Shown here one piece after another: positions 921-44,439 of a DNA stretch of 64,000 bases. The position numbers and the translations under genes are program-made. The DNA lies in IMG/VR virus record IMGVR_UViG_3300030099_004448, positions 62,001 to 126,000 of that record. One strand, 5' to 3'. The notes beneath the pieces were generated by a model. It had not been told where the DNA came from. It made no database searches and saw nothing but the letters and a program-made list of their open reading frames with translations. Numbering within the stretch: position 1 is the stretch's first letter; the number at the start of each line of letters is the position of its first letter.

Positions 921-2288
921 ATGGACGGACAAAACCTACAACAATTACAGGAGAAGTGGGCTCCTATCCTTAATCACGAAAATTTCAGTGATATTGCCGA
1001 TTCCCACAAGAGAGGAGTTGTTGCACAGCTCCTAGAGAACCAAGAGAAAGAGTCTCAAGAGACCGCTTCCTTCCTTGGAGAAGCTGCACCAACTAACTCA
1101 GGTCATGCACCTGCAGGTTCTAACGTTGCTGGCTTCGATCCCGTTCTGATCTCCTTGATCAGACGCTCCATGCCTAACCTGATCGCATACGACATCTGCG
1201 GCGTTCAGCCAATGAGTGGTCCTACTGGACTTATCTTCGCAATGCGTTCCCGTCAGTCCGCTCAGGACGGAACCGAGACCTTCTTCGATGAAGTCGATTC
1301 CGCATTCTCTGGTCAGGACAACGACAGTTCCCTCACTGGTGGTTTCTCTGATGCCGCTGCTGGTATGGGTACTGATGCACAAGCAGGTACTAACCCAAGT
1401 GCGCTGAACCCAGTTGGTTCTGCAAACTCCCTCGGTTACACCGTTGGTCAGGGTATGTCCACCGCTGAGGCTGAAGCTCTCGGAGACGGTGCGAACAACC
1501 ACTTCAACCAGATGGCATTCTCTATCGAGAAAGTCACTGTAACCGCTAAGTCCAGAGCACTCAAAGCTGAGTACTCCTTGGAACTCGCACAAGACCTCAA
1601 GGCGATTCACGGTCTGAACGCTGAGGCTGAGTTGGCAAACATCCTGTCAACTGAGATCCTCGCTGAAATCAACCGCGAAGTCATCAGAACTATCTACAAG
1701 GTTGCTGAACAGGGTGCAACTGCAAACGTTGCAACCGCAGGTACTTTCGACCTCGACGTTGACTCCAACGGTCGTTGGTCTGTTGAGAAGTTCAAGGGTC
1801 TTCTGTTCCAAATCGAGCGCGATGCCAACGCAATCGCACAAAGAACTCGTAGAGGAAAGGGCAACACCATCATCTGCTCCGCAGACGTTGCTTCCGCTCT
1901 AACCATGGCTGGTGTACTCGATTACACCCCTGCACTCAACGCTAACCTTAACGTTGATGACACTGGTAACACCTTCGCTGGTGTTCTCCAAGGTAAGTAT
2001 CGTGTTTACATCGATCCTTATGCTGCAAACGTTGCTGCTGATCAGTACTACGTTGTTGGTTATAAGGGTTCTAGCGCATACGACGCAGGTCTCTTCTACT
2101 GCCCATATGTTCCTCTCCAGATGGTTCGTGCCGTCGGTCAGGACACCTTCCAGCCCAAGATTGGCTTCAAGACCCGTTACGGTATTGTTGCTAACCCATT
2201 TGCAGAAGGAACTACCGCAGGTCTCGGAAGACTCCGCATCAACGCAAACCGTTACTACAGAAGAGTCAAGGTTGCTAACCTCATGTGA
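921..2288 (+). CDS. gp23: Major capsid protein
   Basis: EKWAPIL, FDPVLISLIRR, GVQPMSGPTGLIFAMR, KSRALKAEYSLELAQDLKAIHG, YCPYVPL, FQPKIGFKTRYG motifs. Confidence 0.99.
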   Translation: MDGQNLQQLQEKWAPILNHENFSDIADSHKRGVVAQLLENQEKESQETASFLGEAAPTNSGHAPAGSNVAGFDPVLISLIRRSMPNLIAYDICGVQPMSGPTGLIFAMRSRQSAQDGTETFFDEVDSAFSGQDNDSSLTGGFSDAAAGMGTDAQAGTNPSALNPVGSANSLGYTVGQGMSTAEAEALGDGANNHFNQMAFSIEKVTVTAKSRALKAEYSLELAQDLKAIHGLNAEAELANILSTEILAEINREVIRTIYKVAEQGATANVATAGTFDLDVDSNGRWSVEKFKGLLFQIERDANAIAQRTRRGKGNTIICSADVASALTMAGVLDYTPALNANLNVDDTGNTFAGVLQGKYRVYIDPYAANVAADQYYVVGYKGSSAYDAGLFYCPYVPLQMVRAVGQDTFQPKIGFKTRYGIVANPFAEGTTAGLGRLRINANRYYRRVKVANLM

Positions 2289-2307
2289 TCTCTTCTCACA
2301 TATTTCC

Positions 2308-2333
2308 AGAGGTCCTTCGGGACCTCTTTTTTT
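2308..2333 (+). terminator. Rho-independent terminator after gp23
   Basis: AGAGGTCC-TTCG-GGACCTCT stem (cUUCGg tetraloop) followed by a T-run. Confidence 0.92.
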
Positions 2334-2359
2334 ATGCAAATAAATAAAGATAAAACGCT

Positions 2360-2893
2360 ATGTCATTCTCTGCGTTCGCAAGACAAATTTCTAACAGAAA
2401 CTTTCTTGCCCCAACTGGATTTAAATTTACTTTAGCAAGAACGCCGAAGGTTGATTTCCTTGCACAGGCTGCAAACATTCCCGAGATTGGAATGGGTGTT
2501 GCAATTCAATCCTCATACCTCAAGGATCGCGCTGTCCCAGGTGATAAAATACAATACGGAGATTTTATTCTTCGATTTATTGTAGATGAAGACCTTGAAA
2601 ACTATATGGAAATCCATAACTGGATAAGAGGTCTTGGATATCCAGAATCTATTGCAGAATATCAAAGTTGGATCAATGGAGACGAACTCGCTGCAGACCC
2701 CAACGTCTCCGATGGAACTTTGTTAATATATAATAGTAGTTTCAGGGTTAATGCTAAAGTAGACTTTAGGGGACTTTTTCCCACTTCATTAACAACTGTT
2801 AGTTTTGATTCCGCTACAACTGATGTGGAATATGTAGTCGCTGAGGCTACATTTAAATATGATCTTTATGACATTGAAAAGTATGAATCTTGA
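2360..2893 (+). CDS. gp3: Tail completion / tail-tube terminator protein
   Basis: NRNFLAPTGFKF, ANIP, PGDKIQYG, RFIVDEDLENYMEIHNW; gp23-gp3-uvsY-uvsW synteny; AATAAATA late-promoter-like site at 2339. Confidence 0.85.
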   Translation: MSFSAFARQISNRNFLAPTGFKFTLARTPKVDFLAQAANIPEIGMGVAIQSSYLKDRAVPGDKIQYGDFILRFIVDEDLENYMEIHNWIRGLGYPESIAEYQSWINGDELAADPNVSDGTLLIYNSSFRVNAKVDFRGLFPTSLTTVSFDSATTDVEYVVAEATFKYDLYDIEKYES

Positions 2894-3311
2894 CATGATA
2901 CAAGATCTTTGGGAAAAAGACTCAAAGATCGATGATGATAATTTACATTCAGAATCTACAAAGATTCCGAGTCTTCATTCAAAATACTATAAACTTTATA
3001 ATAACATCCTTGTTCTTAAGAAATCACAAGAGAACAAATATAAAATTTTAAAAAAAGAAAAATGGCAATACTACACTGGTAGAGCAGAACCAGAAGTATA
3101 TGCAGAATATCCTTTTGACCATAAAGTTCTAAAAGGAGACTTAGACAAATATCTCGATGCAGACGAAGATATTATTAAGTGTCTCACAAAAATTGATTAC
3201 TATCAAATGATGTTGGACTATCTAGATAGCATTATTAAAACTATCTTAAATAGAACGTATCAGCTGAAAAACGCGATTGAGTGGCAAAAGTTTATTAGAG
3301 GATATGACTGA
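2883..3311 (+). CDS. uvsY: Recombination mediator UvsY
   Basis: WEKDSKID...ESTKIPSLHSKY...YYTG...RTYQLKNAIEWQKF; ATG at 2883 preferred. Confidence 0.92.
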   Translation: MNLDMIQDLWEKDSKIDDDNLHSESTKIPSLHSKYYKLYNNILVLKKSQENKYKILKKEKWQYYTGRAEPEVYAEYPFDHKVLKGDLDKYLDADEDIIKCLTKIDYYQMMLDYLDSIIKTILNRTYQLKNAIEWQKFIRGYD

Positions 3312-4767
3312 CATTGTAATTGGAAAAAAGAACGAAGTATTTCTAAAGTTAAAGGCAGAACCACACGTATTCCAAGAACTTTCTGAACACTTTACTTTTG
3401 ATGTACCAGGTGCAAAATTTATGCCTCAATACCGTAGTAAGTATTGGGATGGAAAGATTCGACTATTCTCCCCACATACTGGAGAGATCTACGTTGGACT
3501 TTTAGATAAAGTAGTTTCATGGGCAAATAAGTGGGATTACCAAGTAGAGTTTGAAGATAATAAATTCTACGGAACACCTTTTGAAGAAAATGAGATGATC
3601 TCATATGAAGGTGTAAAAGATTACATGACAAGGATCTCTAAGTATAAACCAAGAGATTATCAAGTTGAAGCCGTATATGATGCACTAAAATATAATCGTA
3701 AACTACTCATTTCACCGACCGCATCAGGCAAATCTTTGATGATTTATTCTGTTGTTAGGTATTTTGCAGAGAGAAATAAAAAGATCCTCCTAGTGGTCCC
3801 TACAACGTCCCTGGTCGAACAAATGTACAAAGACTTTGAGGACTATGGTTGGAACGCTGAGGACTGGTGCCACCGCATTTACAGTGGACGTGAGAAGACG
3901 AATGAGTTTCCTGTGGTCATTACTACTTGGCAGTCCATCTACAAACTACCTAGAAAGTTCTTTGATAGTTTTGATGTAGTAATTGGTGATGAGGCCCACC
4001 AGTTTAAATCAAAATCTCTAGTGGGTATCATGACTAAACTTGCAGATGCAAAGTATAGATATGGTTTTACTGGAACTCTAGACGGAACACAAACACATAA
4101 GTGGGTATTGGAAGGACTGTTCGGTCCATCTTATAAAGTTACTCAAACAAAGGAACTTATTGATAAAGGACATTTATCTAAGTTACAAATTAAAATCCTT
4201 ATCATGAGACACAATCCTCAAGTGTTTGAAACATTTGAAGACGAGGTTCAATTTATTATTGGACATGAAAAAAGAAATAACTTTGTAAAAAATCTTGCAT
4301 TAGATCTAAAAGGAAATACCTTAGTATTATTTGCTAGGGTTGAATCACATGGACTCCCTCTTTATGAATCAATAAATAGTTCTGCAGATAAAGGAAGAAA
4401 AGTATTCTATGTTCACGGAGGAGTGAACGCAGAAGAAAGAGAACTTGTAAGAGAGATTACTGAAAAAGAAAATAATGCAATTATTGTTGCCTCTTATGGA
4501 ACTTTCTCAACTGGAATCAACATTAAAAACTTACATAATGTGATCTTTGCATCACCATCCAAATCTAGAATCAGGAATCTACAGTCTATTGGTAGGGTTC
4601 TAAGAAAAGGAAATGGTAAGAATCAAGCAGTTTTATATGATATTGCTGACGATTGCACAAAACAGAATAGAAAAAACTACACTCTCAATCATTTAATTGA
4701 AAGAGTAAAAATATACAACGAAGAACAATTCAATTATGAATTCATCCAAGTAAATCTAAAAGAGTAA
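3304..4767 (+). CDS. uvsW: SF2 RNA-DNA/DNA helicase UvsW
   Basis: WDGKIRLF, SPTASGKS, DEAH, GFTGT, STGINI, QSIGRVLR motifs. Confidence 0.97.
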   Translation: MTDIVIGKKNEVFLKLKAEPHVFQELSEHFTFDVPGAKFMPQYRSKYWDGKIRLFSPHTGEIYVGLLDKVVSWANKWDYQVEFEDNKFYGTPFEENEMISYEGVKDYMTRISKYKPRDYQVEAVYDALKYNRKLLISPTASGKSLMIYSVVRYFAERNKKILLVVPTTSLVEQMYKDFEDYGWNAEDWCHRIYSGREKTNEFPVVITTWQSIYKLPRKFFDSFDVVIGDEAHQFKSKSLVGIMTKLADAKYRYGFTGTLDGTQTHKWVLEGLFGPSYKVTQTKELIDKGHLSKLQIKILIMRHNPQVFETFEDEVQFIIGHEKRNNFVKNLALDLKGNTLVLFARVESHGLPLYESINSSADKGRKVFYVHGGVNAEERELVREITEKENNAIIVASYGTFSTGINIKNLHNVIFASPSKSRIRNLQSIGRVLRKGNGKNQAVLYDIADDCTKQNRKNYTLNHLIERVKIYNEEQFNYEFIQVNLKE

Positions 4768-38510: not shown

Positions 38511-39926
38511 ATGAAATCATTTTCCCAATTTCTTAAAGAAGCCGTAGAAACTTCTGCGTCTGCTCAAGCGAAGAGACTTGGGTTAGAAGGCGATGGTCAT
38601 GGAGACTGGTATGACAAAGATGGAACTCTTGTCGCTAAAACTGTTAGTGGTAAGTTAAAGTTCTTTGGACAAGGTAAGAAGTCAAAAGAAGAGAACAGCA
38701 ATGTAGAGAAACCTACGACATCTAAACCAGATGCTAAGAAATCAGTATCCACCCAGACTCAACCGAAAAAAGTATCTCCAGAAAAACCTGGAGATGCAGA
38801 GGAATCGCAAGAAAAATCAGAGTCTAATGGTGTCGTTATTGTTTTTGGTAGGTTCAATCCTCCGACCATCGGACACGAAAAGTTACTCAATAAAGCTGCA
38901 CAAGAAGCAGAAAAAAACGGATATGAACTAAGAATCTATCCTTCGAGAAGTCAGGATAAGAAAAAGAATCCTCTAGACGCAACTGCTAAGATTGATTATA
39001 TGCGTCAGATGTTCCCCAAGTATGCGGGTAATATTATTGATGATGCAAACTCTAAGACCATCTTCAATGTAATGATTGGTGCAAATGAAGAAGGTCATAA
39101 GAATATGAAGATCATGGTTGGTGCTGACCGTCTTGGCGAGTTCCAAGGTCTAAGTCATAAGTATAATGGTGAACTTTATAACTATGATAATCTAGAAGTA
39201 GTTTCTGCAGGAGATAGAGATCCTGATGCAGAAGGTGCAGAAGGTATGTCTGCATCAAAACTTAGACTTGCAGCGAGTGAAGGTGATTTCAAATCTTTTG
39301 CTAAGGGTGTTCCAAACACACTGAATAATCAGAAGAAAATGGAACTCTACAATACTCTTCGCAAGAGTATGGGTATTAGTGAAACTTGGGAAATTGCTCC
39401 AAAGTTTGACGAAGAGACTTTAAGGAATCGTTATATCAAAGAAGACATTTATTCCATTGGTACTGTTGTAGAAAATATCAATACTGGATTGAAGGGGAAG
39501 GTTTTCAGAAGAGGAACCAATTATGTTATTGCGGTTACTGAAGGTGATGTAATGTTCAAGTCTTGGTTGAGAGATTTGATCGAACATAATGATAAACCTC
39601 ATGAAATTGGAACAGATGAATATAGAAAGTATGTTCAGAAATTAACTCCTGGTCAAAAAATTGCGAGATATAACAAAACTAAAGTTCCTCCCACTATGTC
39701 TGAAGAACCCATAAACCTTAGGGGTAGACGTTTTTTCGGTTTAGGTAGAAAGAATAAGGTTTCAGATTTCAATCATTTGAGATATGGTGGAGATGGATCA
39801 GAAGGTAATGCCGCAAGGAACACTAATAAAAAAGCTCCAGCATATAATTCTCAACAGATGCAATACCCTACGAGGGGACCAAGAAATATTCGCCTAAGAG
39901 GTCCTAACGCTCCCATAGATATCTGA
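38511..39926 (+). CDS. Cytidyltransferase-like (HIGH-motif) protein with N-terminal capsid-targeting-like leader
   Basis: MKSFSQFLKE leader; FGRFNPPTIGHEKL, VGADR, SAGDRDPD, MSASKLR. Confidence 0.85.
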   Translation: MKSFSQFLKEAVETSASAQAKRLGLEGDGHGDWYDKDGTLVAKTVSGKLKFFGQGKKSKEENSNVEKPTTSKPDAKKSVSTQTQPKKVSPEKPGDAEESQEKSESNGVVIVFGRFNPPTIGHEKLLNKAAQEAEKNGYELRIYPSRSQDKKKNPLDATAKIDYMRQMFPKYAGNIIDDANSKTIFNVMIGANEEGHKNMKIMVGADRLGEFQGLSHKYNGELYNYDNLEVVSAGDRDPDAEGAEGMSASKLRLAASEGDFKSFAKGVPNTLNNQKKMELYNTLRKSMGISETWEIAPKFDEETLRNRYIKEDIYSIGTVVENINTGLKGKVFRRGTNYVIAVTEGDVMFKSWLRDLIEHNDKPHEIGTDEYRKYVQKLTPGQKIARYNKTKVPPTMSEEPINLRGRRFFGLGRKNKVSDFNHLRYGGDGSEGNAARNTNKKAPAYNSQQMQYPTRGPRNIRLRGPNAPIDI

Positions 39927-39937
39927 GTAACAAATCC

Positions 39938-39945
39938 TATAAATA
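39938..39945 (+). promoter_or_regulatory. T4-type late promoter
   Basis: Exact TATAAATA 28 nt upstream of 39974. Confidence 0.8.
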
Positions 39946-39973: not shown

Positions 39974-42001
39974 ATGAAAAGTTGGAATAGTTTTTCTAAA
40001 GAGCTTACCGAGAAAAAAGCTAAGAGAGATTACGACGGTGACGGCACCATCGAAACTGGTTCTAAAGAACATGCGGGGGTAGTTCATAACGCTATCCAAC
40101 GCGCTAAGGGTAAAAAGGCCGACGGTCAAGATACTCGTAAAGAAGAAGTAGAAGGGTTAGAAGAAACCAAACTGGCAGATAAAGCATACTCTAGAGCAAG
40201 AGATGAAGGTGCTCAGAGACGCCGCACCAAAGAATATAAGGATGGTGGTAACAGAAGCACTACTCGTAAAGAGAAGGGACTGTATAGACTTGCCACTGCA
40301 CAACGCAGACAAGATGCTGACCTAGGAAGACAGAAAGAAGTTGATAGGTCTTCTGGAATGGAAGGTCACATGAAGAAATCAGTTGCTAAAAAGGGTAAGT
40401 ATGATTATGGTGCAGTCTTAGATAAGAAAGATCCTAAGAAAAATCCTAAGCACACTGCTAATAAAAGTACTAAAAAGGAAGAAGTAGAACAGTATGTTGA
40501 CTTCCTTATCAACGAAGGATATGATTGTTCTCAACTTACATGGGAAGATGTAACTGCAGAGTATGAGTGTTTAGATGAAGGTCTACGTGATGCAGTAAAG
40601 AACCTTTTGGGTAAGGGGAAGAAAAAAGAAGAGAAAAAACCTGAAAGCAGAGGTGAACAACTTCGTAAGAAATATAATGTTGGACCAGATAAGTCTGATA
40701 CTTCTGCTAAGATGCAAATTCTTAAGAAGACTCGTGCTAAGAAAGAAAGAGACCAAAAAGAGTTTGGTGGTTCAAGATACTCCAAGTCTGTTGCTAAGAA
40801 GTCTGCTGATGCACATGATCGTTATCTGAAAGGTGGTTATAGTAAGTATGGCGCTGATGATGCAAGAGGTAAGGGAAATAAAGCTCGTAAGCGCGCTGAA
40901 GCACTTAAGAAAGAAGAACTGGAACTCCAAGAACTTGACATCAAGGGTGCAGTGACTGGTGCTCTCGATAGAGGTTCCAAGTTCATGAAGAAAAATCCAG
41001 TTGGTAGAGCAATAGGTAATGTACTGAAACCAGTCGGATCTGGTCGTGGAACAACGCGCCCCGCTCCTGGTGCAAGACCTGGAACTCCAGGCGGTGGTGC
41101 AACAACTCGCCCAATGATGAATTCCCATGAACCAGAAGGTGATAACCTTCAGGAGAAACCAGGTGATGGATATCTTGGTCCAACACCAATTCCAAATCCT
41201 ATTAGGATGGCAAAAGATGCGGTTGATGCAACTAATCGCAACAGCCAGAAAAAGGTTGATATGGTAAACAAAACTTTGGGACGTGGTTCTGCTTCAATGC
41301 CAAAAGTTAATTACTTCAACAAAGGTCCTAGTGCTGCGTCAAAACGGTATCTTGGTTTATCTTATGAACCAGAAGGTGGACTAGTAGAAGGTATTCGTGA
41401 CGAAGATGCAGAAAAGGGAACCGAAGAAAGAAAGAAACGCCTTGAGAAAAAGCGTGGACACAAAGTAGATGATCATCCTGAGTATGCAAAAGAGTCCGCA
41501 ACTCCTGGACAACCTGCAGAAAAACTGAAGACTGGACGTAAGATGTTCACCATCCCTGATGAGGAAAGATCTGCAGCTGCTGCACGTCTTAAAGAGAAGG
41601 CTAGAAAGAAGCGTGAAGAAAAAATGAAGGAAGAAGTGAAAGTTGAAACTCCAGTAGTTGAAGAAGCCGAATCTAAGGCACAACAAAGACTGATGGGTCT
41701 TGCACTCTCCGTTAAGAGAGGTGACACTCCAATGTCTTCCGTAACTCCACAAGTTGCGAAAATGGCTAGAGAGATGAAGGAAAAGGATCTCAAGGATTTT
41801 GCAGGAACCAAACATGATGGTCTTCCTGAAAAAGTCAAGAAGGAAGAACCAGAAGTTTCCTCACCTTTGGTTGAGTCTCTAGTTGAAAGTGCTGTACAAA
41901 GAATGACAGCAAAAGCAAGAAGAGAAACTGCCGCAGATAAAAGACTTAATCGTCAAGCTTCATCTGCACAGCAGAGAGCGGAGTTAAACGCAAAAAAGTA
42001 A
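39974..42001 (+). CDS. Modular Lys/Glu-rich virion (internal head) polyprotein, short form; contains a DUF3008-like module
   Basis: MKSWNSFSKELTE leader; many (L/I/V)-x-E junctions; SKAQQRLMGLALSVKRG...DFAGTKHDGLPEKV module. Confidence 0.8.
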   Translation: MKSWNSFSKELTEKKAKRDYDGDGTIETGSKEHAGVVHNAIQRAKGKKADGQDTRKEEVEGLEETKLADKAYSRARDEGAQRRRTKEYKDGGNRSTTRKEKGLYRLATAQRRQDADLGRQKEVDRSSGMEGHMKKSVAKKGKYDYGAVLDKKDPKKNPKHTANKSTKKEEVEQYVDFLINEGYDCSQLTWEDVTAEYECLDEGLRDAVKNLLGKGKKKEEKKPESRGEQLRKKYNVGPDKSDTSAKMQILKKTRAKKERDQKEFGGSRYSKSVAKKSADAHDRYLKGGYSKYGADDARGKGNKARKRAEALKKEELELQELDIKGAVTGALDRGSKFMKKNPVGRAIGNVLKPVGSGRGTTRPAPGARPGTPGGGATTRPMMNSHEPEGDNLQEKPGDGYLGPTPIPNPIRMAKDAVDATNRNSQKKVDMVNKTLGRGSASMPKVNYFNKGPSAASKRYLGLSYEPEGGLVEGIRDEDAEKGTEERKKRLEKKRGHKVDDHPEYAKESATPGQPAEKLKTGRKMFTIPDEERSAAAARLKEKARKKREEKMKEEVKVETPVVEEAESKAQQRLMGLALSVKRGDTPMSSVTPQVAKMAREMKEKDLKDFAGTKHDGLPEKVKKEEPEVSSPLVESLVESAVQRMTAKARRETAADKRLNRQASSAQQRAELNAKK

Positions 42002-42036
42002 AACCCTCTGAGAAACCTACTTCAGGTTCTCAGAGG
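41980..42036 (+). other. Predicted -1 programmed ribosomal frameshift signal
   Basis: GGAG (41980-83), in-frame A AAA AAG (41992-98), TAA, 6-nt spacer, 13-bp bulged hairpin 42005-42036; the -1 frame is open to 43002. Confidence 0.8.
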
Positions 42037-43002
42037 AAATCTAGAGCTAGACCTCTTTCTGATGATGAAATAGAACAGAAGAAAAAACAGTCGGTTGGAT
42101 TCCAAGCGACCAAGTACCGTTCTGATGCTTTGGTGAAGAAGGCTAAAATTGAAACAAAAGGGAAAATCAAAGGTGAAAAAATAAAGTCCGAAAGACAAAA
42201 AGCTAGATTAGATGATGCTAGGGCTAACAGAGAACGTAAAAAAGAAGAATCAAGAGAAAAAGAAAAAAAGGCCAGAGAACAGTTTAAAGATCAGAAAAAA
42301 GTAAAGAAGGCTGCAGATAAAGCAGAAAAAGCTCAGTCTGCTGCAGATAAACAGAAAGAAAAATCCAAAGCCTACGCAAGTGGCATGTCAAGTGGAAGTC
42401 TCAAAACCGCCTCTTCTACTGGTTCGGGAACAGGTCTAAGTGATACCGCTAGTGCAATGGCGTCTAACTTGGGTACTGTTGCTGTCAGAGCTGCAAACGC
42501 AGGTGCTGCGGTTGGTTCTGCAATTAGAGCAAAACAAAAACAAAACAAAGCAGACAAACTTGCTAAGAAGGCTAAGAAGAGAGAAAAAAAGTTTGACAAG
42601 AAATATAATGAAGAAGTCTTCTATGATTGGAGAGAAGAGTTTCTGCATGAAGTAGAAAAGAGAGGTGACAAAAAAGAAAAAAAGGTCATCGATGTAATGA
42701 GAGGAAAGAACCAAATTGAGTTCAATCCTGTTACTGAAGCAAATGTTTCAGAAGACATGAGTGGTATGTCCCAGAAGTCTGGCGACAAACGTCCTACAGA
42801 TAAAGGTGCGGGTATGACCGCAAAGGGAGTCGCTAAATACAATCGCCGCACTGGTGGTAATTTAAAGACTGCTGTTACCACTCCACCTTCTAAGTTAGAC
42901 CCAGACTCAAAGGCTGCAAAACGTAGAAAGAGTTTCTGTGCTCGTTCTAAAGGTTGGACTGGTGAAAGAGGAAAGGCTGCACGTCGTCGTTGGAATTGCT
43001 GA
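41998..43002 (+). CDS. -1 frame extension of the polyprotein (334 codons); C-terminal DUF6321-like module
   Basis: Open from the slippery site; only a weak TTG/GTG start near 42130; ends GMTAKGVAKY...KRRKSFCARS...ARRRWNC. Confidence 0.75.
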   Translation, partial: VKPSEKPTSGSQRKSRARPLSDDEIEQKKKQSVGFQATKYRSDALVKKAKIETKGKIKGEKIKSERQKARLDDARANRERKKEESREKEKKAREQFKDQKKVKKAADKAEKAQSAADKQKEKSKAYASGMSSGSLKTASSTGSGTGLSDTASAMASNLGTVAVRAANAGAAVGSAIRAKQKQNKADKLAKKAKKREKKFDKKYNEEVFYDWREEFLHEVEKRGDKKEKKVIDVMRGKNQIEFNPVTEANVSEDMSGMSQKSGDKRPTDKGAGMTAKGVAKYNRRTGGNLKTAVTTPPSKLDPDSKAAKRRKSFCARSKGWTGERGKAARRRWNC

Positions 43003-43008
43003 TCGTTT

Positions 43009-44439
43009 ATGAAACAACTGAATGAATACGATGAGGTTCTAAAAAAACCTCATCCTCTCTTTGTCTATAAAAATTATATTAACGATATAAAATTTCCAAC
43101 CCGAGAAATCATTAAGGAAAACTCGGAACATAAAATATTTGCTAAACAGGCAACTATGGATCTTCCCGAAGGAGATGAGTTGTTTGTTTCTTTTTGTAGT
43201 CAAAAATATTTTGAGTCTGTTCTAAAAGAGTTTAAGTTATTTTCAAAAGTCAGACCAAAATTATTCAAAAAGGTAATTGATGGTGACTATGAATTTGGTA
43301 AGGATGTAAAAGTCAAAGCCGAATATTGTATTAATAATGCAAGAACTTACTTTGACAAAGAACCTAATATAAGAGAACCCGAAAATATATTTGATCTAAT
43401 TATTTTTGGTGACGACGCTGTTGACTTTGAAATCCATGAGTTGGATATGAAAGGTAATGATGTCAACTTACAAAAGATAGAGTGTGAAAAAAATACTGCT
43501 ATTTTATTTCCATTTGTTCCTTCATCTTGGCATCGACAGAGAATAAAAGAATTTGATGGAAAGAGTGTCAGGATAAGTTTTATTGTGGATGATTCGTTGC
43601 AAGAAATAAATCCAAAAATTTGTAGTCAAAGAGTTCAACAAAAAGCAAGCATCCTACCTAAAGATGAACAGGTCGGTGAAGATCTTGGTATAAAAAGAGA
43701 GGGAATATTCGATCCATGGGGAACTTACTTGTTTGATGATTATGTGAATTGGGATAATTATGTTGAACTAGAAAAAGACTTTCCTTCTTTTGAAAAAGTG
43801 ATGCAGATACATGCATCTGGTAAAGATGTTGATGGAAAGTATGATTCAGTATTCGCTTCTGCTTTTGATGAACGAGTTGTGTTGAGTCCTATCTGGCAAA
43901 AATTTGTGAAATATCATACGAGTAAATTTTATTTCCAAGATATATTTGAAAAATTTGATGGTATTTGGAAAACTTGGAGACCCGAACTGAGAGAAAAAAT
44001 TTATTCTAGAGATTATACTATAGGATATATGCACAGCAAGAAGGACACTGCAGAATCGGAAACTCCAGATATAATGTATGAACTTCTATTTACCCATGAC
44101 CTTGAATGTATGAATCAACATGGTCTTCATGTTCATGTTGATAGGGATGATAAGGTGTTTCAGTCAATGATTTATTTCCGACATCCCGAAGACAGATGTA
44201 ATGATGCAAATCTTCAATTACATCATTGTCATGAGTGGGGTAATTATTTTCCAGGAATTGTAGATAAAAAAGTTGATTATATTTCAAATAGATCTGTAAC
44301 ACTTCCATTTACACCAAAGTCATATCACTCCGTTTCTCCTGGTGATAGAACAGGAAATCCGTATACAAGAAAGATGGTTAACATTATGTTTAGAATTAGT
44401 CCAGATTTGCGTCAGTTAGATGGGGACTTTAGAAGATAA
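43009..44439 (+). CDS. Tandem double 2OG-Fe(II) oxygenase-like protein
   Basis: C-half: HVD...MIYF...SYHSV...R; N-half similar (PHPLFVYKNYI, F..FC.Q.YF, NTAILFPFVPSSWH...R) but lacks a clear HxD. Confidence 0.7.
   Translation: MKQLNEYDEVLKKPHPLFVYKNYINDIKFPTREIIKENSEHKIFAKQATMDLPEGDELFVSFCSQKYFESVLKEFKLFSKVRPKLFKKVIDGDYEFGKDVKVKAEYCINNARTYFDKEPNIREPENIFDLIIFGDDAVDFEIHELDMKGNDVNLQKIECEKNTAILFPFVPSSWHRQRIKEFDGKSVRISFIVDDSLQEINPKICSQRVQQKASILPKDEQVGEDLGIKREGIFDPWGTYLFDDYVNWDNYVELEKDFPSFEKVMQIHASGKDVDGKYDSVFASAFDERVVLSPIWQKFVKYHTSKFYFQDIFEKFDGIWKTWRPELREKIYSRDYTIGYMHSKKDTAESETPDIMYELLFTHDLECMNQHGLHVHVDRDDKVFQSMIYFRHPEDRCNDANLQLHHCHEWGNYFPGIVDKKVDYISNRSVTLPFTPKSYHSVSPGDRTGNPYTRKMVNIMFRISPDLRQLDGDFRR

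What the first reader, a model, noticed from the sequence alone, without database searches (positions are those of the whole stretch)
39974..43002. Beads-on-a-string polyprotein probably cut by the prohead protease into many small packaged peptides
Seen: the gene follows an exact late promoter and begins MKSWNSFSKELTE. Unrelated short basic modules are separated by acidic (L/I/V)-x-E junctions (GLEE, CLDE, ELQE, NLQE, GLVE, VVEE, PLVE, PVTE, NVSE), with a repeated S(H/Y)EPEG..L.E linker at ~41120 and ~41360. One module resembles DUF3008 (~41670-41840) and the last resembles DUF6321. Known: T4 internal proteins carry an MKT(Y/F)xEFxxE capsid-targeting sequence, and gp21 cleaves after (I/L)-x-E; gp23 here shows FLGE|A. 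Inference: a single gene delivers a cocktail of small effectors (DNA condensation, anti-defence, host takeover), and the frameshift controls the dose of the distal ones.
Basis: partly seen in the sequence, partly recalled or inferred. Interest (0 to 1): 0.72.

Follow-up and report, generated by a model that had tools for sequence, protein, structure and literature searches.

The report
Frameshifted modular capsid-cargo polyprotein gene
A late gene of an abundant marine T4-like cyanophage strings many small basic protein modules together with conserved linkers that end in the head-protease cutting motif, and a conserved ribosomal frameshift extends it, so one gene probably loads the phage head with a mixed set of small proteins.

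Summary
ORF1 (39974-42001, 675 aa) follows a conserved late-promoter box, starts with a T4-like capsid-targeting leader, and consists of short, mostly basic modules joined at (L/I/V)-x-E sites.

Comparative data strengthen it:
- About 2,700 database proteins share single modules in shuffled orders.
- Each module keeps a hydrophobic-x-Glu triplet just before its first residue, whatever lies upstream (59/59, 15/16 and 12/12 for three modules).
- A universal about 11-residue connector, (S)(Y/F)EPEGxx(L/I/V)xE, occurs 57 times in 150 hits against 0.5 expected.

ORF1 ends in a dnaX-type -1 frameshift cassette: a GGAG-like box, A_AAA_AAG, a stop, then a -20 kcal/mol hairpin 6 nt downstream. Seven independent relatives keep it, with compensatory stem changes. 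It opens a 334-codon frame that has no start codon and ends in DUF6321.

The phage has a gp21 protease homologue. Its gp23 carries FLGE|A where T4 is cut at FLTE|A. Syntenic proteins of phage S-SCSM1 were found in virions by mass spectrometry.

Packaging and cleavage of this protein are inferred, not shown. The "effector cocktail" idea has no support. Verdict: a new variant of the T4 internal-protein system, plus a previously unreported programmed frameshift.

The parts
39938..39945 (+). T4-type late promoter box TATAAATA, 28 nt upstream of the ATG
   Evidence: Sequence. (T/G)ATAAATA lies at the same distance in 7 relatives, and 8 of 12 exact boxes in the genome lie 25-43 nt before an ORF, including the gp22 and gp67-like genes.
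39974..42001 (+). ORF1, 675 aa, pI 9.7, modular polyprotein (zero-frame product)
   Evidence: 59 orthologue clusters of 417-675 aa share its N- and C-termini but differ in the middle modules.
39974..40012 (+). Leader MKSWNSFSKELTE, resembling a capsid-targeting sequence and ending in L-T-E
   Evidence: T4 IPII/IPIII start MKTYQEFIAE|A. L11-T12-E13 are nearly invariant in 43 orthologues. The first module follows other leader types at the same boundary in other proteins.
40013..40165 (+). Module 1 (aa 14-64, KKAKRDYDGDG...), ends GLEE
   Evidence: Found at N-terminal and internal positions of many other proteins.
40166..40579 (+). Module 2 (aa 65-202), a basic part plus the acidic EGYD helix unit, ends CLDE
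   Evidence: 82% identical to part of the modular gene of S-IOM18 that lies next to its cytidylyltransferase and is itself annotated 'cytidyltransferase'. phmmer stretches.
40580..40933 (+). Module 3 (aa 203-320, GLRDAVKN..., net +17), ends ELQE
   Evidence: The most widely shared module. 59 of 59 occurrences are preceded by [LIVMF]xE, in about 20 different upstream contexts.
40934..41155 (+). Module 4 (aa 321-394, LDIKGAV...) with connector SHEPEGDNLQE at 41123-41155
41156..41389 (+). Module 5 (aa 395-472, KPGDGYLGPTPIPN...) with connector SYEPEGGLVE at 41360-41389
   Evidence: 15 of 16 occurrences are preceded by [LI]xE. P0106 is an 82-aa stand-alone protein made of the leader MKTFNEFKQQLQE plus this module.
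41390..41665 (+). Module 6 (aa 473-564, GIRDEDAEKG...), ends VVEE
   Evidence: 12 of 12 occurrences are preceded by [LIVMF]xE.
41666..41875 (+). Module 7, DUF3008 (aa 565-634), ends PLVE
   Evidence: Pfam PF11450, E 1.6e-13. Best-predicted part of the model, pLDDT about 80. The stand-alone homologue S-SCSM1 ORF93 is annotated as a virion protein from mass spectrometry.
41876..41998 (+). Module 8 (aa 635-675), the basic helical tail that ends in the slippery Lys-Lys
   Evidence: Invariant in orthologues. 58 of 59 clusters end ..N/K-A/V-K-K.
41980..41983 (+). Shine-Dalgarno-like GGAG, 8 nt upstream of the slip site (possible stimulator)
   Evidence: GGAG, GGGG or AGGA at the same place in 7 relatives, although the encoded residue changes. 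Function not tested.
41992..41998 (+). Slippery heptamer A_AAA_AAG in the ORF1 frame
   Evidence: Identical in 7 independent relatives. No indel in contigs of independent runs.
41999..42001 (+). Zero-frame stop TAA immediately after the heptamer
   Evidence: TAA or TAG in all 7 relatives.
42005..42036 (+). Stimulatory hairpin: 10-bp stem (42005-42014 / 42027-42036) beginning 6 nt after the heptamer
   Evidence: dG -19.7 kcal/mol, z -4.5. Relatives give -19 to -22 with compensatory stem changes and different loops. Most stable structure downstream of any of the 104 AAAAAAG in the genome.
41998..43002 (+). -1 frame extension (334 codons from GTA at 41998, stop 43000-43002). The trans-frame product would be 1009 aa, 112 kDa
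   Evidence: Open frame with no start codon before 42130. Amino-acid conservation with synonymous changes and in-frame indels begins right after the slip site.
42724..42753 (+). Junction NPVTE|ANVSE| before the last module
   Evidence: Relatives carry a Cys-rich module inserted exactly between these two sites. DUF6321 is preceded by hydrophobic-x-E in six other architectures.
42754..42999 (+). Terminal DUF6321 module (82 aa, net +16)
   Evidence: Pfam PF19846. It is the C-terminal unit, or a stand-alone 79-130 aa protein, in 80 viral loci. Model pLDDT 72, three helices, no informative fold match.
38511..39926 (+). Neighbouring cytidylyltransferase/NMNAT-like gene whose leader MKSFSQFLKE matches the T4 targeting sequence at positions 4, 7, 8 and 10
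   Evidence: Homologues were detected in virions of S-SM1, S-SCSM1, S-CBWM1, S-SZBM1 and S-CREM2 (PMC3037559, PMC9602691, PMC10665884).
1071..1082 (+). FLGE in gp23, the site homologous to the T4 gp23 maturation cleavage
   Evidence: Alignment with T4 gp23 FLTE65|A66. The gp21 homologue lies just upstream of the window.

Best explanation
The locus is one late gene of a T4-like cyanomyovirus that yields two nested products. Normal termination gives a 75-kDa chain of eight short modules. A programmed -1 ribosomal frameshift at A_AAA_AAG yields a 112-kDa chain that carries a further very basic body and a terminal DUF6321 module. The shift is stimulated by the adjacent stop, by a conserved hairpin 6 nt downstream, and perhaps by an upstream Shine-Dalgarno-like box.

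Both products start with a short leader like the T4 capsid-targeting sequence. The proposal is that this leader takes them into the prohead core. There the gp21-family prohead protease would cut after the Glu of the hydrophobic-x-Glu triplet that ends the leader and every inter-module connector. That would release a set of small, mostly basic proteins that stay with the DNA and could enter the host with it.

Only the frameshifted chain links the distal modules to the leader, so frameshift efficiency would set their copy number.

Shown here: the gene, its modular mosaic, the conserved junction motif and connector, the frameshift cassette and its conservation, and the presence of the protease and of an L-x-E site at the gp23 maturation position.

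Inferred: packaging, cleavage, retention in the head, delivery to the host, and any function of the modules.
For: Frameshift:
- Heptamer, stop and hairpin are identical in layout in 7 independent assemblies. Stem changes are compensatory: U-A to C-G in one relative, A-U to C-G in two, and a 3-bp insertion in both arms in another. Loops diverge.
- The hairpin has z -4.5 and ranks 1 of 104 among structures after AAAAAAG in the genome.
- 58 of 59 orthologue clusters end at the slippery Lys-Lys.
- The -1 frame is conserved as protein from the first codon, with excess third-position change and in-frame indels, and has no start codon for 44 codons.
- The sequence is identical, with no indel, in contigs of independent runs.

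Modularity and junctions:
- 2,711 proteins match at E<1e-3, all partially.
- The triplet [LIVMF]xE precedes the GLRSAVK module in 59/59 cases, KPGDGY in 15/16 and GIRDxDPEKG in 12/12, in many different upstream contexts.
- The connector motif occurs 57 times against 0.46 +/- 0.66 in shuffles and is followed by more than 40 different sequences.
- DUF6321 is preceded by the triplet in six other architectures. Where it is internal, a connector follows it at once.
- Single modules exist as stand-alone genes made of a T4-like leader plus the module: P0106, L020, L023.

Protease and targeting:
- The gp21 homologue matches PF03420 at E 3e-34.
- gp23 FLGE|A aligns with T4 FLTE65|A.
- T4 IPII/IPIII begin MKTYQEFIAE|A. 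In that sequence residues 4 and 7 drive targeting and 8 and 10 drive processing (PMC9026906).
- The neighbouring NMNAT here begins MKSFSQFLKE.

Virion association of relatives:
- S-SCSM1 ORF91-93 were found by mass spectrometry.
- Cytidylyltransferases were found in S-SM1 and S-CREM2 virions.

The structure model shows helical islands separated by low-confidence linkers that contain most of the junctions.
Against: - No direct datum shows this protein, or a close orthologue, in a virion or cleaved. The S-SCSM1 modular protein ORF92 shares only weak module-level similarity (E 4e-4).
- ORF1's own leader has Ser, not Leu/Ile, at position 8, so its processing site would be L11-T12-E13 rather than the T4 position.
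- The junction P3 residues include V, M and F, which are not documented for T4 gp21.
- ORF2 shows no enrichment of the motif. Its 247-residue body would stay uncut.
- Some family members, such as stand-alone DUF3008 and many DUF6321 proteins in small podovirus-like contigs, have no leader. Their phages may have no prohead protease.
- The connector could instead serve folding, core binding or recombination. Its core codons are the same in the few DNA copies examined.
- The structure model has low confidence (pLDDT 53).
- The protease-peptide complex prediction gave no answer.
Confidence: 0.55

Rival explanations
1. The protein is packaged but not cut between modules. It would act as one long, largely disordered basic internal or ejection protein, with at most the leader trimmed. 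The conserved hydrophobic-x-Glu triplets and the EPEG connector would serve another purpose, such as helix capping, binding to the scaffold core, or spacing.
For: The model is mostly helices joined by flexible stretches with no global fold. Motif enrichment by simple counting is modest. ORF2 has almost no candidate sites. The same codons recur in the connector core.
Against: The triplet is kept at the exact module start in 86 of 87 occurrences across many upstream contexts. The same modules exist as separate genes with their own T4-like leaders, which implies that they work as separate small proteins. The triplet is the specificity motif of the protease family that this phage encodes.
Confidence: 0.18
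2. It is a sacrificial prohead-core or scaffold component like T4 gp22, gp67 and gp68. It would be built into the core and cut at the junctions, but most fragments would leave the head before DNA packaging, so nothing is delivered to the host.
For: T4 core proteins are cut at several L/I-x-E sites and their fragments are mostly expelled (PMC9026906). The connectors are acidic, like gp67. The gene has a late promoter, as the gp22 and gp67-like genes do.
Against: The phage already has gp22 and a gp67-like ORF next to gp21. The modules are basic (pI 9-11), like the DNA-bound internal proteins that T4 retains. Module content is hypervariable between close relatives, which is unusual for a size-determining scaffold. 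Syntenic S-SCSM1 proteins are found in mature virions.
Confidence: 0.12
3. The products are late cytoplasmic proteins, for example DNA-binding or host-directed factors, that are not packaged. The N-terminal likeness to the T4 targeting sequence would be coincidental.
For: The gene lies in the replication and nucleotide-metabolism region (MazG upstream; DNA primase and nrdA downstream in the syntenic regions of relatives), not in the head gene cluster. Authors of the proteome papers note that abundant late proteins can co-purify with virions.
Against: The T4 ip genes are also scattered away from the head cluster. The same leader type heads the neighbouring NMNAT, whose homologues are found in virions of at least five cyanophages. 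The junction motif matches the head protease.
Confidence: 0.1
4. There is no recoding. ORF1 and ORF2 would be two genes, or one gene broken by a homopolymer assembly error or a recent mutation. Alternatively the extension arises by transcriptional slippage on the A run.
For: The junction is a run of six A, a classic site of sequencing error. Gene callers annotate a separate downstream gene.
Against: Seven independent assemblies and contigs of separate runs share the same A6 plus stop. The orthologues are diverged, so the break is old and maintained. The conserved coding region has no start codon. A hairpin with compensatory changes sits at the spacing typical of ribosomal frameshifting. Six A is shorter than the runs of about nine known to give efficient polymerase slippage (own knowledge), and an RNA-library contig spans the site without an indel (weak evidence).
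Confidence: 0.04

Closest known systems
T4 internal proteins IPI, IPII, IPIII and Alt (capsid-targeting sequence plus gp21 processing)
   Same: Both have a short N-terminal leader of the MK(T/S)(Y/F/W)xxF..E type ending in a hydrophobic-x-Glu site, basic cargo, a late gene outside the head cluster, and a phage that encodes a gp21-family protease. Cargo is hypervariable between relatives.
   Different: T4 proteins are single-cargo genes cut once (Alt at both ends). Here up to ten modules are concatenated with a dedicated conserved connector and reshuffled across thousands of proteins. Part of the cargo is reached only by frameshifting. No sequence homology to the T4 cargo proteins was found.
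T4 prohead core proteins gp22, gp67 and gp68
   Same: One polypeptide is cut at several L/I-x-E sites inside the prohead. Both contain acidic stretches.
   Different: Those are conserved scaffold components whose fragments mostly leave the head. This gene is hypervariable and basic, and it lies elsewhere in a genome that already has gp22 and a gp67-like ORF.
Inner-body and ejection proteins of giant phages phiKZ, 201phi2-1 and SPN3US
   Same: Many head-internal proteins are processed after Glu by a diverged gp21 homologue. Paralogous, fast-evolving cargo is delivered with the DNA (PMC9026906).
   Different: The motif differs (S/A/G-x-E). Those are separate genes rather than a connector-linked chain, and no frameshift is known there.
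Escherichia coli dnaX tau/gamma programmed -1 frameshift (and IS-element A_AAA_AAG sites)
   Same: The heptamer A_AAA_AAG is identical. A stem-loop lies about 6 nt downstream and a Shine-Dalgarno-like box upstream. The result is two nested products in a fixed ratio.
   Different: In dnaX the shifted frame ends at once and gives the shorter product. Here the zero frame ends at once and the shift adds 334 residues. The upstream box is 8 rather than 10 nt away and is untested. The host is a cyanobacterium.
Frameshifted structural genes of other phages (lambda G/GT tail chaperone, T7 capsid 10A/10B)
   Same: -1 frameshifting near the 3' end of a late gene makes a minor extended form of a virion-related protein (own knowledge).
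   Different: The genes, slip sites and roles differ. The library searches made here found no report of a frameshifted internal-protein gene in a T4-like phage.

Membership tests
T4-type capsid-targeted internal proteins | N-terminal leader of about 10 residues with aromatic residues at positions 4 and 7, Leu/Ile at 8 and Glu at 10 | tested here: inconclusive
   ORF1 has W4, F7, S8 and E10, then L11-T12-E13, so the targeting positions fit but the processing site is displaced by 3 residues. The neighbouring NMNAT (F4, F7, L8, E10) fits fully.
T4-type capsid-targeted internal proteins | The phage encodes a gp21-family prohead protease with L/I-x-E specificity | tested here: met
   PF03420 match, E 3e-34, at genome 60945-61595. 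gp23 has FLGE|A where T4 has FLTE65|A. Specificity itself is inferred from this alignment.
T4-type capsid-targeted internal proteins | The protein is present inside mature heads with the leader removed | not testable with these tools
   Only indirect evidence exists: syntenic S-SCSM1 ORF91-93 and several cyanophage cytidylyltransferases were detected in virions. No peptide-level data are held.
T4-type capsid-targeted internal proteins | Sequence homology of the cargo to IPI, IPII, IPIII or Alt | tested here: not met
   No match in Pfam, PHROGs, NCBIfam or PDB searches beyond DUF3008 and DUF6321. Cargo homology is not expected in this system, which is defined by its leader.
Viral polyprotein cut by a virus-encoded protease | Independent functional units separated by protease sites | tested here: met
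   Units recur alone or in other orders, and the hydrophobic-x-Glu triplet is kept at their boundaries.
Viral polyprotein cut by a virus-encoded protease | Demonstrated cleavage products | not testable with these tools
   This needs virion N-terminomics or in vitro cleavage. The complex prediction gave no answer.
Programmed -1 ribosomal frameshift, dnaX type | X_XXY_YYZ heptamer in the zero frame | tested here: met
   A_AAA_AAG at 41992-41998, in phase with ORF1 and invariant in 7 relatives.
Programmed -1 ribosomal frameshift, dnaX type | Stable downstream structure 5-9 nt from the heptamer, kept by compensatory change | tested here: met
   Spacer 5-6 nt, dG -19 to -22, z -3.2 to -5.4. Arms co-vary and loops differ. 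Formal pair counts were not made because the alignments were out of register.
Programmed -1 ribosomal frameshift, dnaX type | Upstream Shine-Dalgarno-like stimulator | tested here: inconclusive
   GGAG, GGGG or AGGA lies 8 nt upstream in all 7 relatives.
Programmed -1 ribosomal frameshift, dnaX type | Long -1 frame under protein-coding constraint that cannot be started on its own | tested here: met
   322-606 codons in relatives. Conservation begins at the first codon, third-position changes are in excess (32 against 16 and 15), indels are in frame, and there is no start codon for 44 codons.
Programmed -1 ribosomal frameshift, dnaX type | Trans-frame protein observed | not testable with these tools
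   No proteome is available. RNA-library contigs cover both ORFs but cannot show translation.
Pfam DUF3008 (PF11450) and DUF6321 (PF19846) | HMM score above the curated gathering threshold | tested here: met
   51.1 bits against a cut-off of 24, and 46.2 bits against 28.5.

The most novel reading that the evidence does not exclude
Marine T4-like phages would possess a general cargo-cassette system. A universal protease-cleavable connector, (S)(Y/F)EPEGxx(L/I/V)xE, together with interchangeable targeting leaders, would let any small protein module be plugged into a capsid-loaded chain and be reshuffled by recombination at the connector. A conserved frameshift would tune the stoichiometry of distal modules. 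This would make it a phage counterpart of polymorphic effector systems. It would also explain how enzymes such as NMNAT get into cyanophage heads.
Probability: 0.35. Interest if true: 0.85.

Novelty: new variant of a known kind. Interest (0 to 1): 0.74.

Why it matters
Cyanomyoviruses are among the most abundant viruses in the sea. This exact 3-kb sequence is held by at least nine marine metagenome runs from five studies.

Virion proteomes of these phages repeatedly contain non-structural proteins such as NMNAT. The papers read here offer no packaging mechanism. A T4-like targeting leader and protease-site grammar would supply one.

The proposal would also define a very large, unannotated family of head-delivered proteins: about 2,700 cluster representatives, all named hypothetical.

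It would add a clean, phylogenetically supported case of dnaX-type frameshifting in a cyanobacterial translation system and in a T4-like internal-protein gene.

It makes concrete predictions, namely neo-N-termini at named residues and one trans-frame peptide. These can be tested in cultured relatives. The leader could also serve as a tool to load foreign proteins into cyanophage heads.

Tried and rejected
- **Near-identity DNA search of the phage collection:** only 65-175-bp patches matched. tblastn gave only single-module hits. No cultured phage therefore has a full-length homologue.
- **Family and structure-sequence searches:** PADLOC, NCBIfam and PDB sequence searches found nothing for ORF1 or ORF2.
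- **Structure of ORF1:** with 43 orthologues the model reached pLDDT 53 and pTM 0.20. That is too poor for fold searching and was used only as a rough order/disorder profile.
- **DUF6321 module:** the model (pLDDT 72) matched only other DUF6321 proteins in AlphaFold DB clusters and nothing in the PDB. The Atlas search returned only DUF6321 clusters. Function remains unknown.
- **Complex prediction:** gp21 homologue plus the junction peptide aa 452-482 gave no answer. It is not evidence either way.
- **Covariance model of the cassette:** it found exactly one site per locus, but its alignment left the arms of three relatives out of register. Formal pair counts were not made, and the covariation statement rests on per-sequence folds.
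- **BLAST breakpoint test among 61 orthologues:** enrichment near hydrophobic-x-Glu sites was only 2- to 3.6-fold, because alignments run into the shared connectors. The anchor-based test is the informative one.
- **Late-promoter count:** the genome-wide count of TATAAATA is not above chance.
- **S-SCSM1 supplement:** it holds no peptide-level data.
- **Upstream 375-aa gene:** it is not a detectable homologue of the S-SCSM1 virion protein ORF90.
- **Assembly error at the A6 run:** considered and rejected.
- **Literature searches:** no description was found of a cyanophage targeting sequence, of this family, or of a cyanophage frameshift.

Full report
**What is in the sequence**

The window belongs to a 238,937-bp virus record. 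The record has T4-type head genes:
- a gp21-family prohead protease just upstream of the window (PF03420, E 3e-34);
- a gp22-like ORF and a gp67-like acidic ORF;
- gp23 at window 921-2288 (PF07068, E 2e-154).

ORF1 runs from 39974 to 42001 (675 aa) and begins MKSWNSFSKELTE. An exact TATAAATA lies 28 nt before the ATG. The box (T/G)ATAAATA is kept at that distance in seven relatives. Eight of the twelve exact boxes on this strand of the genome precede ORFs, among them the gp22 and gp67-like genes. The raw number of boxes is not above chance.

Pfam confirms DUF3008 at aa 565-621 and DUF6321 at the end of the second frame. By simple counting, [LI]xE is enriched about twofold in ORF1 (11 against 5.1 +/- 2.0, p about 0.008). 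It is not enriched in ORF2.

**The frameshift is real and conserved**

ORF1 ends ...GCA AAA AAG TAA. The heptamer A_AAA_AAG (41992-41998) is followed by the stop. After three more bases comes a hairpin with a 10-bp stem (42005-42036; -19.7 kcal/mol, z -4.5). GGAG lies 8 nt upstream.

The -1 frame is open from 41950 to 43002 and has no ATG, GTG or TTG before 42130.

Seven independent assemblies keep the heptamer, a TAA or TAG stop, and a hairpin of -19 to -22 kcal/mol starting 5-6 nt after the heptamer. They are the window, four IMG/VR contigs and two Tara contigs. Their stems differ by compensatory changes:
- U-A to C-G in L007;
- A-U to C-G in L091 and L128;
- a 3-bp insertion in both arms in L092.

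Their loops are unrelated.

Further support:
- Of 104 AAAAAAG sites in the genome, this one has the most stable downstream structure.
- 58 of 59 orthologue clusters (90% identity level) end at the slippery Lys-Lys.
- The -1 frame continues for 322-606 codons in relatives.
- It is conserved as protein from its first codon, with many synonymous differences (third positions 32 against 16 and 15 in the most diverged pair) and in-frame indels.
- Contigs from independent sequencing runs are identical across the site. A contig of a related strain from an RNA library spans it without an indel. Metatranscriptome contigs cover parts of both frames.

An assembly error or a recent pseudogene is therefore excluded. 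Ribosomal -1 frameshifting of the dnaX type is the best reading. Its efficiency is unknown.

The phage encodes no tRNA-Lys. It does encode tRNA-Val(UAC), which reads the first -1 codon, GUA. The significance of this is unknown.

**The protein is a mosaic of portable modules**

An exhaustive phmmer search found 2,711 proteins at E<1e-3. All are partial matches. The matched stretches fall into discrete blocks of the query: about aa 8-60, 57-166, 160-200, 198-320, 321-380, 385-472, 472-555, 560-630 and 630-675.

Close orthologues keep the first module and the last about 160 residues but swap, add or drop middle modules. Lengths range from 417 to 675 aa, and to 739 aa in L004, where an extra unit sits between two EPEG linkers. 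The second frame behaves the same way. Relatives carry a Cys-rich unit inserted exactly between NPV(S/T)E and N(I/V)(K/S)E, and one relative has a 270-residue insertion.

**Boundaries carry a conserved cleavage-type motif**

I anchored on the first residues of modules and read the three residues before them in all database hits:

| Module start | Preceded by [LIVMF]xE (or [LI]xE) | Note |
|---|---|---|
| GLRSAVK | 59 of 59 | about 20 different upstream contexts |
| KPGDGY | 15 of 16 | [LI]xE |
| GIRDxDPEKG | 12 of 12 | |
| LDIKGAV | 5 of 5 | LQE |

The first module follows four different N-terminal leaders at the same point, each ending (L/I/Y)-x-E.

A longer connector, [YFLH]-E-x-[EDRSQK]-G-x-x-[LIVM]-x-E, is typically NS(Y/F)EPEG(E/D)x(L/I/V)xE. 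It occurs 57 times in the 150 best hits, against 0.46 +/- 0.66 in shuffles. More than 40 different sequences follow it.

DUF6321 is preceded by hydrophobic-x-Glu in six unrelated architectures. Where it is not C-terminal, a connector follows directly after its last Cys.

Single modules also exist as separate small genes with a T4-like leader. Examples are P0106 (82 aa: MKTFNEFKQQLQE plus module 5) and L020, L023 and L024 (MISFKEYLEE, MKSFKDFLGE and MQNFKQWLEE plus other units and DUF6321).

A less direct test, using BLAST breakpoints among orthologues, gave only 2- to 3.6-fold enrichment.

**Link to the T4 head system**

T4 IPII and IPIII begin MKTYQEFIAE|A. In that leader, residues 4 and 7 drive capsid targeting and residues 8 and 10 drive processing. 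gp21 cuts after Glu in L/I-x-E (review PMC9026906).

The gene just upstream of ORF1 is a cytidylyltransferase/NMNAT-like enzyme. It begins MKSFSQFLKE|AVE, which matches all four positions. Its homologues in S-SCSM1, S-IOM18, S-SSM4 and a metagenomic relative begin MKSFLQFLKE, MKKFSAFLIE, MKKFSDFLTE and MKSFFRFLTE.

ORF1 has W4 and F7 but Ser at position 8. Its nearly invariant L-T-E is at 11-13.

gp23 of this phage has FLGE|A aligned with the T4 maturation site FLTE65|A66.

Cytidylyltransferase/NMNAT proteins were detected by mass spectrometry in virions of S-SM1, S-SCSM1, S-CBWM1, S-SZBM1 and S-CREM2. In S-SCSM1 the syntenic 520-aa modular protein and a stand-alone 69-aa DUF3008 protein were detected as well. 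None of these papers proposes a packaging signal.

In S-IOM18 and S-SSM4 the modular gene is annotated 'cytidyltransferase', apparently by proximity. It is followed by further small genes with MLSFKDLQE- and MLDFNTYLEE-type leaders.

**Most likely mechanism**

1. Late transcription (inferred).
2. Translation gives the 75-kDa chain and, by -1 slippage at A_AAA_AAG, a 112-kDa chain (strongly supported).
3. The leader takes both chains into the prohead core (inferred from likeness to T4 and from virion proteomes of relatives).
4. The gp21-family protease cuts after the Glu that ends the leader and each connector (inferred from motif conservation).
5. This would release fragments of about 5-16 kDa with pI 8-11, a basic body of about 32 kDa from the frameshifted part, and the 9-kDa DUF6321 unit.

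Because only the long chain joins the distal units to the leader, the frameshift rate would fix their dose.

What the units do is unknown. No family of known function, defence-related model, solved structure or informative fold match was found. The ORF1 model shows helical islands separated by low-confidence linkers that hold most junctions, but its confidence is low.

**Rivals**

- An uncut disordered internal protein. This is disfavoured by the positional conservation of the motif and by the existence of stand-alone leader-plus-module genes.
- A sacrificial scaffold whose fragments leave the head. This is possible and differs from the main proposal only in the fate of the fragments.
- A cytoplasmic late protein. 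This is disfavoured by the shared leader with a repeatedly virion-detected enzyme.
- No recoding. This is excluded for error or pseudogene. Transcriptional slippage is unlikely on six A with a spaced hairpin.

**Caveats**

- The P3 residues include V, M and F.
- ORF2 has few candidate sites.
- Some family members lack a leader and occur in small podovirus-like contigs that may have no prohead protease.
- The connector's conserved codons could also serve as recombination microhomology.

**Comparison and novelty**

In how it would work, this is closest to the T4 internal-protein and Alt system and to the multiply cut core proteins. The giant-phage inner-body proteins are a further parallel.

It differs from all of these in three respects:
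- many cargo units are concatenated in one gene;
- a dedicated universal connector joins them;
- recoding is used to reach part of the cargo.

The frameshift cassette is a textbook dnaX layout in a new gene and host group.

The literature searches of the held library found no description of this family, of a cyanophage targeting sequence, or of a frameshifted internal-protein gene. I rate it a new variant of a known kind, of high interest to phage biologists. The key biochemical steps are still untested.

Noticed in passing
window 38511-39926: The cytidylyltransferase/NMNAT-like gene begins MKSFSQFLKE, matching the T4 IPII/IPIII targeting sequence at positions 4, 7, 8 and 10. It has GATAAATA upstream. 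Homologues are repeatedly found in cyanophage virions without an explanation, and this leader would provide one.
   Followed up: partly
genome G000:C1:143884-143955 (outside the window): The phage carries 11 tRNA genes. None is for Lys, but one is tRNA-Val(UAC), which reads GUA, the first codon of the -1 frame after the slip.
   Followed up: no
genome G000:C1:60392-60637 (just upstream of the window): An 81-aa very acidic ORF with a late promoter lies between the portal region and gp21. It resembles T4 gp67 in size, position and composition.
   Followed up: no
L004:6217-7296, L007:5614-6666, L092:4419-5384: Relatives carry a Cys-rich unit (CDCG..CGKKICE.CGKP, like a zinc ribbon) inserted exactly between the two hydrophobic-x-Glu sites that are adjacent in the window (42724-42753).
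   Followed up: partly
L091:4710-6527: One Tara relative has an insertion of about 270 residues, rich in Pro/Thr/Lys, in the frameshifted part. It is bounded by a duplicated EEVFYDWRE motif.
   Followed up: no
window 42610-42660 and database hits: A second recurrent pre-junction motif, (F/Y)x(D/N)WRxx(L/M/F)xE, precedes several modules. It resembles the ORF1 leader (SWNSFSKELTE), hinting that internal connectors and leaders are related.
   Followed up: no
window 43030-43054: A 9-11-bp inverted repeat with T-runs on both strands (terminator-like) lies just inside the next gene (43009-44439), 28 nt after the ORF2 stop.
   Followed up: no
L141 (S-IOM18) 2159-4045 and L142 (S-SSM4) 2462-4105: In two cultured cyanophages the modular gene next to the true cytidylyltransferase is itself annotated 'cytidyltransferase' although it has no such domain. 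Small genes after it start MLSFKDLQE and MLDFNTYLEE.
   Followed up: partly
window 39974-43002: The exact 3-kb sequence is held by at least nine marine metagenome runs from five studies. Parts of it appear in metatranscriptome contigs, so the phage is widespread and probably active in situ.
   Followed up: partly
genome G000:C1:53638 (+), outside the window: A second AAAAAAG is followed by a 12-bp hairpin (-17.3 kcal/mol). I did not examine whether it is another recoding site or a terminator.
   Followed up: no
window 42370-42520: The frameshifted part contains a Gly/Ala/Ser-rich, weakly hydrophobic stretch (SSTGSGTG...NLGTVAVRAANAGAAVGSAI). Similar stretches (GIPMAIGAGAIAAG) follow connectors in other family members. 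They might interact with membranes.
   Followed up: no
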